Of a stretch of DNA of 64,000 nt, positions 13,319-37,601 are shown piece after piece. This DNA is from Octopus bimaculoides (Eukaryota): contig NC_068982.1 of NCBI RefSeq assembly GCF_001194135.2, forward strand, positions 162,105,882 through 162,169,881, given 5' to 3'. The notes beneath the pieces are model-generated. The model ran no database searches. It saw only the letters and a program-made list of their open reading frames with translations, and had not been told where the DNA came from. Position 1 is the stretch's first letter, and every line of letters begins with the position of its first letter. The translations under genes were made by a program, and so were the position numbers.

Positions 13319-13761
13319 CAGTGTTTCTCAACCTTTTTACCCTTGTGTAATGCTTAAAATAAATTACATGTCTCAAGGAACCCCTGAACAAAAAAAATTA
13401 TATACCATATTTTTCTCATACTTTTTCATTGTAGTTCACATGGTAAACATCATATATATATATATATATANNNNNNNNNNNNNNNNNNNNNNNNNNNNNN
13501 NNNNNNNNNNNNNNNNNNNNNNNNNNNNNNNNNNNNNNNNNNNNNNNNNNNNNNNNNNNNNNNNNNNNNNNNNNNNNNNNNNNNNNNNNNNNNNNNNNNN
13601 NNNNATAACATAATAGGGATGATGTCTATATTACTAAATTACAATAACCAATAATATATTGTGCTTGTATAGTAATATTACAATCATGAAATTAACATTA
13701 TCTTATCTCACTCTTTCTTGTGGAACCCTAGGGATCCAGGAACCCTGGTTGAGAAATTCTG
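13319..13761. mobile_element. hAT-type MITE (Charlie-like TIRs)
   Basis: TIRs CAGTGTTTCTCAACC / GGTTGAGAAATTCTG; flanking 8-mers AGTTACGG / AGTTAAGA (6/8 match) consistent with an 8-bp TSD. Contains an assembly gap. Confidence 0.7.
13471..13604. other. Assembly gap (N run)
   Basis: N run next to an (AT)n tract. Confidence 1.
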
Positions 13762-15180: not shown

Positions 15181-15816
15181 ATAGTATTCTTAGAATCTTC
15201 AGTCAAAACAATGTAATGTTCTGAATGAGGTGAAATAACAAACATCTGTTCCAGAAATTACATCAGGACAAGTTACAGCAAAGTTTCAAAACTTAATGGT
15301 GAATTACTTCTTGTTCCCCCAATTGACAGCCTCACTTCTTATTTAATTGTGTTGAAGTCGTCCATTATGTATGTAGCTACAGTATTTAGTTTGCTGGGAG
15401 TTTTGTGTAATTCTATCCATAGTTTTCATATTTGAACAGAAATTGAAGACATTTTTGTCAGGTAAAACTTTTCAATGGTATATAGTTAAACAGGATGTTT
15501 AGTATCTGAGCAAATGGTGGGTTTGGCAGATCCGGGGTGAAGAAATAGGCTATGACACAGATGGGGGAGACCTACAGGAAGACACACTGGAAAAATAGTA
15601 GCGGTGGCAGTGTAATAATTTCACTTCAACATTCCAGGAATTTCACTGACCTTGTTTGTTTGCAGTAAAATTCAGATAATTAGCTCAAAATTCCGTGACT
15701 CTTTATATCATACTATATAATATCATAAGCTAGTATTGAGTTCTTTTTTCCAACTCTGCAGTTATGTGTTCAATGAAAATACTCACTTTCATCTCTCTCT
15801 CTCTCTCTCTCTCTAT

Positions 15817-16230
15817 NNNNNNNNNNNNNNNNNNNNNNNNNNNNNNNNNNNNNNNNNNNNNNNNNNNNNNNNNNNNNNNNNNNNNNNNNNNNNNNNNNNN
15901 NNNNNNNNNNNNNNNNNNNNNNNNNNNNNNNNNNNNNNNNNNNNNNNNNNNNNNNNNNNNNNNNNNNNNNNNNNNNNNNNNNNNNNNNNNNNNNNNNNNN
16001 NNNNNNNNNNNNNNNNNNNNNNNNNNNNNNNNNNNNNNNNNNNNNNNNNNNNNNNNNNNNNNNNNNNNNNNNNNNNNNNNNNNNNNNNNNNNNNNNNNNN
16101 NNNNNNNNNNNNNNNNNNNNNNNNNNNNNNNNNNNNNNNNNNNNNNNNNNNNNNNNNNNNNNNNNNNNNNNNNNNNNNNNNNNNNNNNNNNNNNNNNNNN
16201 NNNNNNNNNNNNNNNNNNNNNNNNNNNNNN
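15817..16230. other. Assembly gap flanked by (CT)n
   Basis: N run. Confidence 1.
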
Positions 16231-16231
16231 N

Positions 16232-16265
<34 letters not shown>

Positions 16266-21015: not shown

Positions 21016-22499
21016 TGTGACTCGTGAGGGAGAGGAGGGATGGGAGTATGATTCAAGAGTTCATGCAATAAGAATCAGCATATCAGGTAGTATCCTGGTT
21101 TGAATGTTTGTAACAAAATGGAATCTGTTAAAGGCATCCACTTGGTCAGGGATAGTGTTCACCTTGGCAACATGTTAAGTCTAAATCTTATCAGAGTTAA
21201 TAAAACTGCAGGTGGTGGTTGTAGCAATGAGGATAAACACTTGCTGTTATTTGAGACTTATGAAGGTTGTGTCTCCATTATGAAGTCTACTCTCTGTACG
21301 TGGAAGGGATCTTCTGCAGTGCTTTCAAGACTGGTAGGGTAAAAGATATCCTTCGACATTACAAATATTCCTTTCTCTGCTTAAGTAAAAATAATTATTA
21401 CTATAAGTAGACATCCTTGATAAGTAAATCAGCTAATTATTTATTTACTTTGTAATTAATTTTAATTATTAATATTCAAAGAGATGGTTGAAACAAAAAG
21501 TAAGTTTCCAGATTAGATTATTTGCAGTACTAGGTAATGAGGTGTTCATATCTTATCAGAATCAACTTCAGCTTTCTTCACAATGAAATCAGTATTTTAC
21601 TGGGGTCAAATGAATGCAATGTACTCTAACCCTAATCCTAACTCTTCACTCCTTTAAAAATGGTTTTGTTTTAAATTTGATTTTACAAAATTAAATGTGG
21701 TGTTTAGTTCAGTTATGTTCTGAGTTTAAATTCTGAAATCACCTTGGGTTGTCAAAAAAATACCAGCTTTATAAGTTAATTTAATCATCTATTTTTTTCT
21801 TGGAAATTCAAGACTTTTATATCTATTAGAAATCATTATTAATTAGAGAATTAACACACATAATCGTTACTGTTATACTGACCTGATCTAGATCCCTCAT
21901 CATCATCATTTTACATCTACTTTGCATGCTGGCATGGGTTGGAGTGTTGAACAGGATTTGGTAAGTCATAGGGCCCTGTCTTGCTCCACCTCAGTTTTGG
22001 TAAGGTTTCTTCAGTTGGATGCCCTTCCTAACACTTACCTTTACAGTGTGCAGTGGGTGCATTTTTCATGGCTCCAGCATTATAGTGGTGTCTTACTCTC
22101 AGCAAGACTAATGTTCAGTCTAGATAACTTGTCCCTTCTTTGTTTTCCAACCACTTCACAAAGTGTACTGGGTGCCTTTTCTGTGGCACCAGAACTCATG
22201 GAGTCACCTCATAATTAACAAGACCAAAGAGTTCGCATGACTGAAAGAGGCAGAGGAATAGTGCTGTGTGTGTGTGTGTGTGAGTGAGTGGTGATTTTAG
22301 GCAAAGTATTGAGAAAAGTTAAATGTGTGATAGAAAGAACAGATTTATTGTTGTAAGAAGCTGATAGTAAGGAAAGTAATAGGAAACAGTGTTGCAAGAG
22401 AGAATAGAAAGGCTAGGGAAAGGGGGGAAGAGAAAGCATAGTGTTGTGGGTTAGTGAGAGACGGGGACAGAGGAGTGAGGATAAGTTGTTGTGTGTGTG

Positions 22500-23560
22500 G
22501 TTGGGGAGCAGGCACACTTAAACGGCTTCTCTTATGGAAGGATTATCCTGAGGTTGGGCATCGTACATTGTGGCTCAGTTTTGCTATGAGAAACAGTCAT
22601 CATCATCATCGTTTAACGTCCGCTTTCCATGCTAGCATGGGTTGGACGATTTGACTGAGGACTGGTGAAACCGGATGGCAACACCAGGCTCCAGTCTGAT
22701 TTGGCAGAGTTTCTACAGCTGGATGCCCTTCCTAACGCCAACCACTCAGAGAGTGTAGTGGGTGCTTTTACGTGTCNNNNNNNNNNNNNNNNNNNNNNNN
22801 NNNNNNNNNNNNNNNNNNNNNNNNNNNNNNNNNNNNNNNNNNNNNNNNNNNNNNNNNNNNNNNNNNNNNNNNNNNNNNNNNNNNNNNNNNNNNNNNNNNN
22901 NNNNNNNNNNNNNNNNNNNNNNNNNNNNNNNNNNNNNNNNNNNNNNNNNNNNNNNNNNNNNNNNNNNNNNNNNNNNNNNNNNNNNNNNNNNNNNNNNNNN
23001 NNNNNNNNNNNNNNNNNNNNNNNNNNNNNNNNNNNNNNNNNNNNNNNNNNNNNNNNNNNNNNNNNNNNNNNNNNNNNNNNNNNNNNNNNNNNNNNNNNNN
23101 NNNNNNNNNNNNNNNNNNNNNNNNNNNNNTCCTGAGCCTACCTCTTCCACGGGTTCCCTCAACTGTTAGGGTGTGGCACTTTTTCACGCAGCTATCCTCA
23201 TCCATTCTCACCACATGTCCATACCAGCGCAATCGTCTCTCTTGCACGCCACAACTGATGCTTCTAATGTTCAGCTTTTCTCTCAAGATACTTACACTCT
23301 GACGGGTATTCACATTGACATTACACATCCAACGGAGCATACTGGCTTCATTCCTTGCGAGCTTACGTATGTCCTCAGCAGTTACAGCCCATGTTTCACT
23401 GCCATGTAGCATGGTTGTTCGTCTGCTGTCTAAACTAACTAAGATACCTGCTGGCGTTAGTGAGCGCTCCATGAGACTTCATATTTCTCTTGCAGAAAAT
23501 CCCTATACCTCCTTATTAAATGCATATGCACCAGCTCTGCCTTCTGATAGTCACAATGCA
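22500..23560 (+). mobile_element. Old BovB-like RTE endonuclease fragment, split by a younger RTE insertion
   Basis: LWKDYPEVGHR...FAMRNS (to 22598) joins LLSKLTKIPAGVSERSMRLHISLAENPYTSLLNAYAP (from 23423). Confidence 0.7.
22599..23420 (-). mobile_element. 5'-truncated young RTE LINE (RT C-terminus, 3' UTR, (GAT)n tail)
   Basis: RTTMLHGSETWAV...RRLRWYGHVVRM...EGTRGRGR is open without stops; GTC microhomology/TSD at 22596-22598 and 23421-23423; internal N gap at 22777-23129. Confidence 0.9.
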
Positions 23561-24860: not shown

Positions 24861-24959
24861 GAAAAGTTACCTCTTTACTTAGTTGTTACTACACTATCAC
24901 CATGATGTATGTGTGTTGTTTTCCATAACTCAAGCACACACCTGTTTTTTAATGCAGTA

Positions 24960-25199
24960 CTATTCAAGCGTGGCTGATGCCAGTGCTGCCTGACTGGCTC
25001 CTGTGCTGGTGGCATGTAAAAAGCACCCATTACACTTTTGGAATGGTTTGCATTAGGAAGGGCATCCAGCTGTAGAAACCTTGCCAAATCAGATTGGAGC
25101 CTGGTGCAGCCTCCTGGCCTATCAGTTCTCAGTGAAACTGTCCAGCTCATGCCAGCATGGAAAGCAGATGTTAAACGACAATAATGATGATGATGATGA
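24960..25199 (+). mobile_element. RTE-type 3' end, older copy
   Basis: Homologous to 1-200 but more diverged; (GAT)n tail. Confidence 0.8.
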
Positions 25200-27803
25200 A
25201 CACGTTTTCGATACATTTTAATACCTCAAACCAGTTTTTTAAAACACATTTAACCATGAGATTGCTTCTGTTAGGTTGTACCAAATATAAAAGTTTGACA
25301 TAAATCACTCTCTTTCTCCCCCATACATACAGCCATCCATCTCACACACATGCATGCACTCATAGATACACAGACAATTGCACTCTCTTTCTATCTCTCT
25401 TTTTCTCTATGACTGGTCTCAGTACATAGCATTAAGTTCATACTAACATTTGGCACAGCTATAAACAAGCAGAAGTAGATGGATGATTGGCTGAGGGAGC
25501 AGAAGATACATTGGACTGGGATTTCCTTGTGCTTTCCCTCAGCTCATAAGACATTTTAAGTCCAGCCCTACAGTTTAATAAAATACTTGTTTATGGTTAT
25601 ATCATAACAAATTGCTTCCAACCGTATCACTCTGAAGTTAAGCAACATCGTGATTGGTTGGTACTTAGAGGAATACTGTTTGGGAAATCTAAGTATCATA
25701 AGTATTTTATAGTCTGAGCAAACAAAAAAATTCCTGTATAGTTGCTTGACTTGCAAGTTGTAGCAGCCAAAATCTCCTCAAATTACACCCTACTATTTTA
25801 AAAAGATACACTGAATAATGTGATTCTCGATTTTTCACACCTCCTGTATAATATATAGTTATCTTCTGTTTCTAAATGTTCATTTAGCTATTCCTGTACC
25901 ATGAAGTTTCTTCAAACAGAGCTGTCTGAACCGAGAGATATTTAAGTCCTTTAGAGCTTTGTAGACTTTGCTTGTATAAGTTATTTTCTTGGTCTCTCTA
26001 CCTACTTCACTACATTAACTGCTATTTCCTCTGCAATATCTCACAAAATAATACAGGTTTATCATAGCCAATCTCTTCTTCATAACTAAAATCATATTGA
26101 TGTACAGCATTGAATTAAAAACTAGTTATATGCATTCATGTACAAATGCACACACATACATGAATGAGTGTACATGCACACTCATGTACAAATGTATGTT
26201 TTACTTAGCAGCTCATCCCTTGGTCACTCTCTACTTGCAGACGTTCCATAATAATATAAATCACTCATTTTTCCTTTCTTGTATTTAATGTGGTGTGGTT
26301 ATTCATTGACACATTCTGTTTATTACTTGATATATGTGTGTGAGGAGATGATAGATTTATCTGTTTTATTTCTTTTCTTTCTTTATTATTATTTAGTTAT
26401 TTCTCTTTTTCTATCCAACATTTACTGACCCAGCTAATGTAATTTTACACACAGGTAAAACACTTTTAATTGAACAAAAGCAATGATTAGAAACTGTTTG
26501 CGGTTTACATTTTCTTTAGCCATTGTGTTTGTTGTTGTTGCCCCTCCCCCTCACTCTCTTTGTATATGACTCACATTACTGCATTCAAGCAAAGAATATT
26601 CTCCTAAAACTATATCAGGTCAAATGTAAATAGCAGACAGACAGACAGACAACACACACACACATCACTCCTTAAACAACTGACTTGTCACTGGCAGCTA
26701 TTTTAGCATTAGCTAAGTCAATTTAAAGCACTGTTTCCTTTATATACTTAGTTATTTATTGAAATTTACTCCAGTATTGAAATACACCCAAACGAGTGAC
26801 ATATATTCAATTGTGATGTATGATACACATTATATAACCTCCACCTGATGTTTAAACTGGATCATACCTACATAGTGTCATATGCTTCAATGGCTCTAAA
26901 GCAGAATAAGTATGAGAAAACAAGTTCTCCGAAAATTTATTTTTTCAGTTATTGTTGTCCATTTTGTGGAATATATGACTTAATGGTAAACACTTCAGGT
27001 TTTTTTTGTTTTATTTTTTTTTTTCCCCTCTTGCAAAAAAAAAAAGAAAGGAGAAAAATGGTGATCGGGAACAATTTAAAAACTTCTATATATGTCCGGT
27101 ATATTTGTATATGTATATTCAATTTTGATTTTATATCTATAATGATGATGCTTATTATTTTGTTTTCTTGCTACTTCTAGTATTTTTTTACACTCTTAAC
27201 ATCTGTTGCATACATCAGATAGGTTCTGTATTTTCTCTTCAAGTATAAATCCTGAAATAATTCCCCAATTAACAATACCTATACTCCTCGTTTTTATAGT
27301 TATATGTAACTCTGCATTTACAGTAATTGTTTCTTTACTTGGGACTGCCTCAGCTTTCATGGTTCAAATTTCCTCTTTTAAAGTAATCTAAAGTAAAATC
27401 TTCCAAAATTTCATGTTTATGTTCCCAAACACCATCTTATTAATGATAGTTATTTTAATAATTTTTTTCATTTTTTAAATCAATTGAAGCAGAGGTGGTG
27501 TATTTTCAACAGAACGAAGGGGTTAATAACAATGTTTCCTTCTGGTATTTTCCCAAAAGATTTTATTAAATAAGTGGTTTATGTTCAAACTAATTATTGT
27601 TTATTGAAATGAGTTAAAGCATTCTAATCATAACTTTATCATCATCATCATCAGCATACATCCATTTTCCATGCTGGCATGGGTTGGACAGTTTGACAGG
27701 AGCTAGCAAGCCAGAGGGCTGCACCAGGTTCCTGTCGTCTGTTTTGACATGGCTAGATGCCCTTCCAAACACCAGCCATTTTACAGAGTGTACTGGGTAC
27801 TTT

Positions 27804-36339: not shown

Positions 36340-36358
36340 CCAAACTGGATTTGAACTA

Positions 36359-37601
36359 CAGTATTTCCCAATTGAATTTGTCCCTTTCTCAAATGAATTC
36401 ATCCCTTCAATATCAAAACCAATTTAGATCTTAAATATTTAAAAATTAGACACCTATAAGTTTAAACAAGCACACAAAATAGTATCTTAGCATGAGAATA
36501 GTGAGAATAAACAAAAAACTAAACTTAAAATGATTTAAACTTATTTTGAAACTCTTGTAATCATAAATATTTCACAAATCCTTCATATTCAATGCTTGCG
36601 GGATGAAAAATGTTTGATGTCGATTATATCTTGCACAATTTACAGCAAATATTGAGTCCATTGCAAGATACATTGCTGTTTTTAAAATATTCATTCTATG
36701 AATCATCATGGGCAAATTTTCTGGTCTGTTTTAGAGATCATTTTTATGACTCTGTGAAACTGCTTCACAAAAGATTTCAATTCATTGAACATTTCCTCAA
36801 TGGGATTAAACATTGGGGAATAAGGAGGTAGATATTTAACCGTATGTTGTGGTGTGAGATCAATTTCATCGACACGTTTATGGATGCATGCATTGTCCAT
36901 AATAAATATGACAAAAAGCTGTTAAATTCAGAAGCTGTGATCTTCTTAAATGTTTCGAATTGGACAAGACCTGACATATCCATAGTGGCAATAATGTTTA
37001 AATTTGCCCCTTTAGTAGAAGAACGATCAGTAATTGCCTGAACTCCATGGTAAGCTCTGCCCATTGACCTTCAAAAAAATAGATCGTAAAAATATTTCAT
37101 AAACAAAAATTTCATACAAGTATTTAGCAAATATAATAATCATTTACCTTGAAATCCAAATGTTGTAATTTGTTTCATCAATATATACACAGCGAATGGC
37201 CAATCCATTATCTTGAAGCCATTCTGTGTAATAACATCGCTCCTTTTTTGTGTTTTCATTATTTCATTCTTGGGGGCAAATTATTAGTATTTTCAGAGTG
37301 TATCCAAGGCCGTCAAAATAGTGATAAGTAGTTGATAATGAAACAGTCAGATCAAATTTCTCTTGTAAAAGTTCTCTCATTCTTTTCAAAGTCAAATTTA
37401 AGTCAAATTTTTGCTCTTTCTGGAAGCAAACAATATTATTTTTTTATCCTGCTCAGATACTTTCTTGTATGTCTTGTTTGGCATGTTAAAAATGTCTAAA
37501 CTATTATGTTTTAAATCAGACTTTAATACTAAAGGGATGAATTCATTTGAGAAAGGGACAAATTTATTTGAGAAAAGGATGAATTCAATCAGGAAATACT
37601 G
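36359..37601 (-). mobile_element. Complete IS630/Tc1-mariner-superfamily (IS630-like, DDE_3) DNA transposon, 1243 bp, TA TSD
   Basis: TA|CAGTATTTCC...GGAAATACTG|TA ends; TIRs 36359-36407 and 37532-37601; transposase remnant inside. Confidence 0.92.
36572..37484 (-). pseudogene. IS630-like transposase pseudogene with predicted intron 37147-37069
   Basis: MPNKTYKKVSEQDKK...NLTLKRMRELLQEKFDLTVSLST...LGYTLK...CVYIDETNYNIWISR|SMGRAYHG...VIFIMDNACIH...LPPYSPMFNPIEEMF...NCARYNRHQTFFIPQAL*. Lesions: an 11-nt duplication (about 37390-37411), a TGA probably from CGA, and frameshifts. Confidence 0.88.

What the first reader, a model, noticed from the sequence alone, without database searches (positions are those of the whole stretch)
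36359..37601. Complete IS630-like transposon whose DDE transposase is split by a spliceosomal intron
Seen: the motif carrying the first catalytic Asp (CVYIDETNYNIWIS) ends at AG|GTAAAT (37148/37147). A 79-nt AT-rich segment ends TTTTTTTGAAG|G (37069/37068), and splicing restores the frame as WIS-R-SMGRAYHG, the expected DETxFN...R..GR spacing of IS630-like enzymes. Removing one 11-nt tandem duplication also rejoins the N-terminus. TIRs and the TA TSD are intact. Known: some Tc1-family elements (C. elegans Tc1, Minos) carry introns. Inference: this is a eukaryote-adapted, intron-bearing lineage of a bacterial-like IS630 family that may be uncatalogued in cephalopods. The ORF track misses it. 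This copy itself is dead.
Basis: partly seen in the sequence, partly recalled or inferred. Interest (0 to 1): 0.8.

Follow-up and report, generated by a model that had tools for sequence, protein, structure and literature searches.

The report
Dead IS630-like transposon with probable intron
This is a decayed copy of an ordinary cut-and-paste "jumping gene" whose enzyme gene is interrupted by a 79-base piece that looks like a small intron, but one dead copy cannot show that it was ever spliced.

Summary
The sequence observations hold. Window 36359-37601 (minus strand) is a 1,243-bp element with a TA target-site duplication, terminal inverted repeats and an IS630-type DDE_3 transposase (Pfam 1e-15). 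A neighbouring palindrome supplies an "empty site" that confirms the ends.

Removing 37147-37069 (79 nt, GT...AG, 82% A+T) gives DETNYNIWISRSMGRAYHG. This aligns without a gap to intronless relatives that read DETNYNIWISRSIGRS. The segment also has a good donor site, a T7 tract and a branch-like TTTAC at -19. Only 2 of 122,764 random 79-mers from the window show a comparable signal set.

The copy is not "complete". It lacks about 55 residues of the DNA-binding domain and 12-16 residues before the second Asp. It also carries two stop codons and three frameshifts.

Every relative I could reach, including a tick gene, Logan contigs and 49 metagenome loci, is uninterrupted at this point. No sibling copy was available.

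The segment sits between 14-nt direct repeats (12/14 identical) that contain AGGT. An insertion there gets GT-AG ends automatically.

Verdict: probably a lineage-specific intron gained by insertion at a protosplice site (about 0.55). The rival is a never-spliced, copy-specific insertion (about 0.38). Intron-bearing Tc1-like elements are already known, for example TLEWI in bivalves, so interest is modest.

The parts
36357..36358 (.). TA target-site duplication, 3' side of the element in transposase orientation
   Evidence: Read directly. The paralogous arm of the host palindrome has a single TA at this position.
36359..36407 (-). 3' terminal inverted repeat, ending ...GGAAATACTG, with two 21-nt sub-repeats
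   Evidence: the repeat finder pairs I1 and I2; MAFFT alignment of the two ends.
36572..37068 (-). Exon 2 remnant, SMGRAYHG...KDL plus the TGA stop at 36574-36572. It holds the second catalytic Asp (GAC 36897-36895) and the Glu of PIE (GAG 36798-36796). It is broken by a deletion with frameshift near 36912-36900, a frameshift near 36770-36740 and an in-frame TAA at 36733-36731.
   Evidence: Three-frame translations; alignment to P0001-P0009; coordinates; tblastn segments.
37069..37147 (-). 79-nt putative phase-2 spliceosomal intron: GTAAAT...TTTAC (A at -19)...TTTTTTTGAAG. In-frame TAA at 37146-37144 if it is retained.
   Evidence: Removal gives a gap-free alignment with intronless homologues.
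37141..37154 (-). Upstream copy of the junction direct repeat, TTTCAAGGTAAATG
   Evidence: 12/14 identical to the downstream copy. Only 1 of 206 AGGT-AGGT pairs in the window reaches 12, and that is this pair.
37062..37075 (-). Downstream copy of the junction direct repeat, TTTGAAGGTCAATG
37148..37484 (-). Exon 1 remnant from ATG 37484-37482 to ...CVYIDETNYNIWIS(R). First catalytic Asp is GAT 37179-37177. In-frame TGA at 37266-37264 where homologues have Arg. About 55 residues of the helix-turn-helix region are missing.
37389..37410 (-). Tandem 11-nt duplication, AAATTTGACTT x2, at the junction of the N-terminal deletion. It causes a frameshift.
   Evidence: the repeat finder family D12; frame restored when one copy is removed.
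37532..37601 (-). 5' terminal inverted repeat, CAGTATTTCC..., with three 21-nt sub-repeats
   Evidence: the repeat finder family D1 and pairs I1/I2; alignment of the ends.
37602..37603 (.). TA target-site duplication, 5' side

Best explanation
The locus is a dead, internally deleted copy of a cut-and-paste DNA transposon. It belongs to an IS630-like clade of the IS630/Tc1/mariner group, with 32 residues between the second Asp and the Glu (DD32E), TA target duplication and TA|CAGT termini.

In the lineage that produced this copy, a roughly 65-nt A+T-rich piece was inserted at an AGGT protosplice site, nine codons after the first catalytic Asp. The insertion duplicated about 14 nt of target. That created a 79-nt unit bounded by AG|GT and AG|G, which the spliceosome could remove exactly, making it a phase-2 intron.

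Spliced mRNA would encode the full DDE transposase. Unspliced mRNA would stop at a TAA one codon into the intron and yield only the DNA-binding half.

Shown: the element's identity, its ends, the lesions, the exact colinear join, the splice-like signals and the flanking repeat. Inferred: that the segment was present in the active progenitor, that it was spliced, and any regulatory role for intron retention.
For: - Identity: DDE_3 and HTH_33. The IS630 model is passed by the closest relatives. TA duplication and TIRs are present, and an internal empty-site control confirms them.
- Exact join: DETNYNIWISR|SMGRAYHG aligns without a gap to DETNYNIWISRSIGRS and DETNYNIWVSRSFGRS. It is the only colinear GT-AG solution.
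- Signals: AAG|GTAAAT donor, TTTAC with its A at -19, T7 tract, AAG|G acceptor, 82% A+T, all in the sense orientation of the gene.
- Rarity: that signal combination occurs in 2 of 122,764 random 79-mers from the window.
- Flanking repeat: 12/14, empirical frequency about 1 in 206. This matches published intron-gain models of insertion or break repair at AGGT (PMC3443670).
- Donor change: relative to the downstream repeat copy, the donor copy differs by C to A at +3 (GTCAAT to GTAAAT). This is the direction that strengthens a donor site.
- No coding sequence was lost at the insertion, unlike the two deletion junctions elsewhere in the same copy.
Against: - Only one copy is available, and it is dead, so the segment could postdate inactivation.
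- All relatives found are uninterrupted here: the tick gene is 1,110 nt for 369 aa, the Logan contigs carry continuous reading frames, and so do 49 metagenome loci.
- No spliced or sibling sequence was found among 5.8 billion protein clusters or 1.84 billion representatives.
- Because the flanking repeat contains AGGT, GT-AG ends and frame restoration follow automatically from any target-duplicating insertion there. They are not independent evidence of splicing.
- The acceptor is AAG, which is less favoured than CAG or TAG (own knowledge).
Confidence: 0.55

Rival explanations
1. The segment is a copy-specific insertion that was never an intron. After this copy was inactivated, a roughly 65-nt A+T-rich filler was inserted during repair of a staggered break, or by a small insertion event, and duplicated 14 nt of target. 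The intron-like look comes from the AGGT in the duplicated target and from the A+T- and T-rich nature of the local DNA.
For: - The 14-nt direct repeat flanking the segment is the signature of an insertion event.
- The same copy shows other repair scars: an 11-nt tandem duplication at a deletion junction and two internal deletions.
- All relatives lack the segment.
- No sibling or transcript supports splicing.
- The two mismatches in the repeat are compatible with neutral decay of similar age to the copy's two nonsense mutations.
Against: - The target had to include AGGT.
- The insert also had to supply, in the sense orientation, a purine at +3, A at +4, a T7 tract just upstream of the acceptor and a branch-like motif at -19. 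My rough estimate is about 1e-3 for a neutral insertion. The random 79-mer rate for the signal set is 1.6e-5.
- The interior matches no repeat in the window.
- It is not a tandem copy of neighbouring exon sequence.
- It has no poly(A) end in the position expected for a retroposed fragment (read).
Confidence: 0.38
2. The intron is an old feature shared by the wider IS630-like animal clade, and its absence from database relatives reflects sampling of processed or intron-less derivatives.
For: Some database entries come from Logan assemblies of unknown library type. In principle these could be transcripts.
Against: - The tick genomic genes are continuous 1,110-nt reading frames in chromosome-scale records.
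- The 49 metagenome loci are genomic DNA and are continuous across the site.
- Relatives encode the junction Arg as CGT or CGA, so they have no AGGT protosplice site.
- Bacterial IS630 elements have no spliceosomal introns.
Confidence: 0.03
3. The segment is an assembly or sequencing artefact, with 79 nt wrongly joined into the element in a draft assembly.
For: The window is a gapped draft with several runs of N.
Against: There is no gap or repeat boundary at 37069-37147. The junctions share a clean 14-nt repeat, and the flanking coding sequence is exactly colinear.
Confidence: 0.02

Closest known systems
Bacterial IS630 family insertion sequences (NCBIfam NF033545) and the wider IS630/Tc1/mariner group
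   Same: TA target duplication, TIRs and a single transposase with N-terminal helix-turn-helix plus a DDE_3 catalytic domain. The closest full-length relatives score 123 bits against a cut-off of 100.
   Different: The host is eukaryotic, and relatives include tick, myxozoan and fungal genes. The termini are TA|CAGT, as in Tc1-like elements (own knowledge). The reading frame carries a putative spliceosomal intron. The window copy itself scores only 77.9 bits because it is truncated.
TLEWI, Tc1-like elements with spliceosomal introns in bivalve molluscs (Puzakov et al., bioRxiv 10.1101/656579; Mol Genet Genomics 2020)
   Same: An ITm transposase gene split by GT-AG introns in a mollusc-type genome. 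It is the precedent for intron acquisition by these elements.
   Different: TLEWI has a DD36E signature, 2-5 introns, usually no TIRs or target duplication, low copy number and a distribution restricted to Pteriomorphia. It was reported absent from cephalopods and gastropods. The element here has DD32E, one 79-nt segment, and clear TIRs and TA duplication.
Tc1, Tc3 and Minos, classical Tc1-family elements with one short intron (own knowledge, not verified here)
   Same: A short intron in an otherwise typical TIR-bounded, TA-inserting element.
   Different: These are the DD34E Tc1 family, and their introns lie elsewhere in the gene. The family profile here matches Sleeping Beauty only at E = 4e-5.
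Intron gain by insertion or break repair at an AGGT protosplice site, leaving short direct repeats (review PMC3443670; Daphnia cases cited there)
   Same: A segment bounded by duplicated sequence containing AGGT, which gives AG|GT...AG|G ends and exact restoration of the coding sequence.
   Different: Those cases were supported by population or orthologue comparisons and by transcripts. Here there is a single dead transposon copy and no expression data.

Membership tests
IS630/Tc1/mariner (ITm) DNA transposon | TA target-site duplication | tested here: met
   TA on both sides. The paralogous palindrome arm shows a single TA at the same site.
IS630/Tc1/mariner (ITm) DNA transposon | Terminal inverted repeats | tested here: met
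   A 49-70 nt core, 84-89% complementary, with 21-nt sub-repeats.
IS630/Tc1/mariner (ITm) DNA transposon | DDE catalytic domain with the three acidic residues in order | tested here: met
   Pfam DDE_3 at 1.1e-15. D (37179-37177), D (36897-36895) and E (36798-36796) align to invariant columns.
IS630/Tc1/mariner (ITm) DNA transposon | Complete N-terminal paired helix-turn-helix DNA-binding domain | tested here: not met
   About 55 residues present in all six closest homologues are missing. Only HTH_33 is detected, at 6e-6. This is a defect of this copy, not of the family.
IS630 family in the strict sense (NCBIfam NF033545) | Score above the curated cut-off of 100 bits | tested here: inconclusive
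   The window copy scores 77.9 bits because it is truncated. Relatives P0001 and P0002 score 123.7 and 123.2, and the tick protein 99.4.
Spliceosomal GT-AG intron | GT and AG termini, extended donor match, pyrimidine tract and branch-like site in the sense orientation | tested here: met
   AAG|GTAAAT ... TTTAC (A at -19) ... T7 ... AAG|G. The combination is rare in random 79-mers. Matching to the consensus rests on my own knowledge.
Spliceosomal GT-AG intron | Removal restores a reading frame colinear with intron-less homologues | tested here: met
Spliceosomal GT-AG intron | Segment and splice sites conserved in independent copies | not testable with these tools
   No sibling copy is in the window or in any searchable collection.
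Spliceosomal GT-AG intron | Spliced transcripts exist | not testable with these tools
   No host RNA data are reachable, and no protein containing the spliced junction was found.
TLEWI (Tc1-like elements with introns) | DD36E spacing | tested here: not met
   There are 32 residues between the second D and the E, both in the window copy and in P0001 (D253 to E286).
TLEWI (Tc1-like elements with introns) | No TIRs or target duplication, several introns, low copy number | tested here: not met
   TIRs and a TA duplication are present, and there is a single candidate intron.
Tc1 family (DD34E) | 34-residue D-to-E spacing and close similarity to Tc1 or Sleeping Beauty | tested here: not met
   The spacing is 32. 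The SB100X catalytic domain matches only at E = 4e-5, with a 2-residue gap.

The most novel reading that the evidence does not exclude
An animal lineage of IS630-like (DD32E) transposons acquired a working spliceosomal intron inside its catalytic domain. It did so through a small insertion that duplicated a 14-nt AGGT-containing target, and this fossil still shows the duplication. That would make it a readable record of how an intron was born in a mobile element. Retention of the intron would produce a truncated protein containing only the DNA-binding half, which could act as a regulator.
Probability: 0.3. Interest if true: 0.5.

Novelty: new member of a known kind. Interest (0 to 1): 0.3.

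Why it matters
If the segment is a true intron, it is a second, independent case in a mollusc-type genome of an ITm transposon tying its transposase expression to the host spliceosome. Unlike TLEWI, this element still has TIRs and a target duplication, so it would have been mobile.

The preserved flanking repeat would document the gain mechanism, namely insertion at a protosplice site. That is seldom visible.

Intron retention would truncate the protein right after the first catalytic Asp. This offers a testable route to self-regulation, by analogy with P-element intron retention (own knowledge).

If the segment is only a copy-specific insertion, the locus is an ordinary transposon fossil.

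Tried and rejected
- Other copies in the window: blastn of the element and tblastn of relatives found none.
- Closer relatives:
  - The word-indexed protein search gave 48% identity at best.
  - The full HMMER search of 1.84 billion representatives with a family profile gave 546 proteins at E <= 1e-30, none closer than 48%.
- Metagenome contigs: 49 related loci, all below about 50% identity and all continuous across the junction.
- Exact TIR pattern in bacterial/archaeal genome contigs and in viral contigs: only single chance matches, never an inverted pair.
- Host identity: a reverse-transcriptase-like ORF at 22768-23472 hit only unnamed ENA/JGI proteins, and Rfam found nothing. The cephalopod assignment stays unverified.
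- Origin of the 79 nt by tandem duplication of adjacent exon sequence: the interior is not similar to either flank (p = 0.38-0.98). Rejected.
- The 79 nt as a member of a repeat or introner family: no significant match in the window.
- Retroposed fragment: no A-rich tail at the end where it would be expected (read). Rejected.
- Truncated database proteins ending near the junction (P0078, P0071, P0163, P0186, P0189): these turned out to be internal deletions or tandem duplications, not intron-split genes.
- My recollection that TRT elements have intron-containing forms was wrong. The paper never uses the word.
- TIRs around the tick genes: the locus is a complex palindrome and was not informative.
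- A literature search for "DD32E" found nothing relevant.

Full report
**1. What is there**

On the minus strand, window 36359-37601 is a 1,243-bp element that reads TA|CAGTATTTCC ... GGAAATACTG|TA.
- The two ends are inverted repeats. A 49-nt right end matches a 70-nt left end except for one extra 21-nt sub-repeat. There are three tandem copies of an AAAGGGATGAATTCATTTGAGAAA-like unit on the left and two on the right.
- Weaker similarity between the ends runs to about 135 nt.
- The TIR pattern occurs only at these two places in the window.

An internal control for the ends turned up in the flanks.
- The element sits in the left arm of a roughly 80-bp palindrome.
- With the element and one TA removed, the left arm reads GGATTTGAACTAGTAAC...
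- It matches the reverse complement of the right arm, GGGTTTGAACTACTAAC..., at 32 of 37 positions.
- The right arm has a single TA where the left arm has TA-element-TA. So the boundaries and the TA duplication are real.

**2. The gene**

The three reading frames hold pieces of one transposase.
- A repaired translation matches Pfam DDE_3 (1.1e-15) and HTH_33 (6e-6).
- It matches NCBI's IS630 model at 77.9 bits, below the cut-off of 100.
- Its closest full-length relatives, P0001 and P0002, score 123.7 and 123.2 bits and so pass that cut-off.
- A family profile finds Sleeping Beauty and Mos1 only weakly, at 4e-5 and 1e-3.
- The acidic triad is D (37179-37177), D (36897-36895) and E (36798-36796).
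- There are 32 residues between the last two. This DD32E spacing is two residues shorter than Sleeping Beauty's in the alignment.

The family is large.
- 546 cluster representatives match at E <= 1e-30.
- Members include genes in the tick Dermacentor silvarum, a myxozoan and fungi.
- "IS630-like" is therefore well supported.

**3. State of the copy**

The copy is not complete. Against the six closest homologues it shows these defects:
- It lacks about 55 residues of the N-terminal helix-turn-helix region. The junction carries the tandem 11-nt duplication at 37410-37389. Removing one repeat restores the frame but not the missing domain.
- It lacks 12-16 residues, with a frameshift, between FNSFL and VIFIMDNA (about 36912-36900).
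- It has a further frameshift near 36770-36740.
- It has in-frame stops: TGA at 37266-37264, where homologues have Arg, and TAA at 36733-36731.

An intact progenitor would have been about 1.45 kb and would have encoded about 345 residues (inference).

**4. The 79-nt segment**

The first-Asp motif CVYIDETNYNIWIS is followed by AG|GTAAAT, and the segment 37147-37069 ends TTTTTTTGAAG|G.
- Removing it gives DETNYNIWISRSMGRAYHG. This aligns residue for residue with DETNYNIWISRSIGRS (P0001), DETNYNIWVSRSFGRS (P0002) and the other relatives.
- Among all GT...AG pairs in the region, only this one gives an open, gap-free join. A 91-nt alternative would delete four conserved residues.
- The segment is 82% A+T, against 70% for the element.
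- It has a donor matching MAG|GTRAGT at 8 of 9 positions, TTTAC with its A 19 nt from the acceptor, and a T7 tract. All of these are in the sense orientation (sequence; consensus from my own knowledge).
- Among 122,764 random 79-mers from the window, 0.35% have GT..AG ends. Only two combine AG|GTRA, a run of at least 7 pyrimidines near the 3' end, and AG.
- If the segment were retained, the frame would hit TAA at 37146-37144, one codon past the junction.

**5.

The two junctions are direct repeats: TTTCAAGGTAAATG (37154-37141) and TTTGAAGGTCAATG (37075-37062), 12 of 14 identical.
- Of 206 AGGT-AGGT pairs lying 40-200 nt apart in the window, this is the only one to reach 12.
- The simplest reading is that a roughly 65-nt piece was inserted into ...TGG ATT TCA AGG TCA ATG GGC... 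with duplication of 14 nt.

This cuts both ways.
- It fits published models in which an insertion or staggered-break repair at an AGGT protosplice site creates a precisely removable intron (PMC3443670).
- It also means that the GT-AG ends and the frame restoration follow automatically from the insertion. They are not independent proof of splicing.

The interior gave no clue to its source.
- It is not a copy of neighbouring exon sequence.
- It matches no repeat in the window.
- It has no A-tail where a retroposed fragment would carry one.

Relatives encode the junction Arg as CGT or CGA. The AGG TCA protosplice site is therefore specific to this lineage.

**6. Comparative evidence**

The decisive test is whether independent copies carry the segment. 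It could not be run.
- There is no second copy in the window.
- No protein more than 48% identical exists in either protein collection.
- TIR scans of the prokaryotic and viral collections gave only chance single hits.

Every relative that could be read is continuous through this codon.
- The tick genes are 1,110 nt for 369 residues.
- The two Logan contigs carry uninterrupted reading frames.
- All informative metagenome loci are continuous there.

So the segment is not an ancestral family feature. It is either a gain in the lineage leading to this copy or an event private to this copy.

**7. Weighing**

- For a neutral insertion, the target would have to include AGGT. The insert would also have to supply a purine at +3, the T-tract and the branch-like motif in the correct orientation. 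I estimate about 1e-3 for this.
- Against that, introns in ITm elements are rare, and this case was selected because it looked like an intron.
- I put a real, lineage-specific intron at about 0.55 and a never-spliced private insertion at about 0.38. Artefact and ancient shared intron take the remainder.

**8. Comparison with what is known**

- Tc1-like elements with spliceosomal introns are already described in molluscs as TLEWI (bioRxiv 10.1101/656579).
- TLEWI has DD36E, mostly lacks TIRs and target duplications, has 2-5 introns, and was reported only from pteriomorph bivalves and not from cephalopods.
- The element here fails those defining features, so it is not TLEWI.
- Tc1, Tc3 and Minos also carry single short introns (own knowledge).
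- The finding is therefore at most a new member of a known kind. Its mild points of interest are the IS630-like DD32E clade and the visible junction duplication.

**9. Verdict**

- Interest is 0.3.

Noticed in passing
window 36347-36358 plus 37604-37672 (+ strand): The transposon is inserted in the left arm of a roughly 80-bp palindromic, MITE-like hairpin. The arms are 32/37 identical once the element and one TA are removed. The hairpin is flanked by short direct repeats (AAACT, or CCCAAACTG overlapping the arm ends). The arm tips resemble a tRNA B-box (GTTCAAAyCC).
   Followed up: partly
window 22768-23472 (-): An ORF that looks like the C-terminal tail of a retrotransposon reverse transcriptase, cut short by an assembly gap. 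Its best matches are unnamed ENA proteins at up to 86% identity.
   Followed up: partly
window 21922-22218 (+), 22665-22780 (+), 24875-25216 (-): A repeated ORF motif (LQSDLAxFLQLDALPNANHSxSVxGAF) recurs on both strands, which suggests several copies of one short interspersed repeat.
   Followed up: no
window ~13450-13600, 15800-16250, 22780-23130, 38730-38900, 45930-46200: Runs of N (assembly gaps), mostly next to (CA)n, (GA)n or (TA)n microsatellites. The window comes from a gapped draft assembly with 34% G+C.
   Followed up: no
L001 1-27 and 1333-1359: The contig encoding the closest relative, P0001, begins with the reverse complement of its own end (CTTATAAATCGTCTTTTGCTAGAGCC). This is either a TIR overlapping the C-terminus and stop codon of the transposase, as in some bacterial IS630 elements, or an assembly hairpin.
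   Followed up: no
L003-L006 (Dermacentor silvarum, CM023479.1 and CM023480.1): Identical 369-residue intron-less transposase genes of this family occur as head-to-head inverted pairs about 700 bp apart on two chromosomes, inside long 98% palindromes. This suggests recent activity or segmental duplication in the tick.
   Followed up: partly
P0078 (649 aa): A database protein of the family consists of three tandem repeats of the N-terminal half, each ending at DETNFNIYCHRS. That is the same codon position as the 79-nt segment here. It looks like a tandem duplication or assembly artefact rather than an intron.
   Followed up: partly
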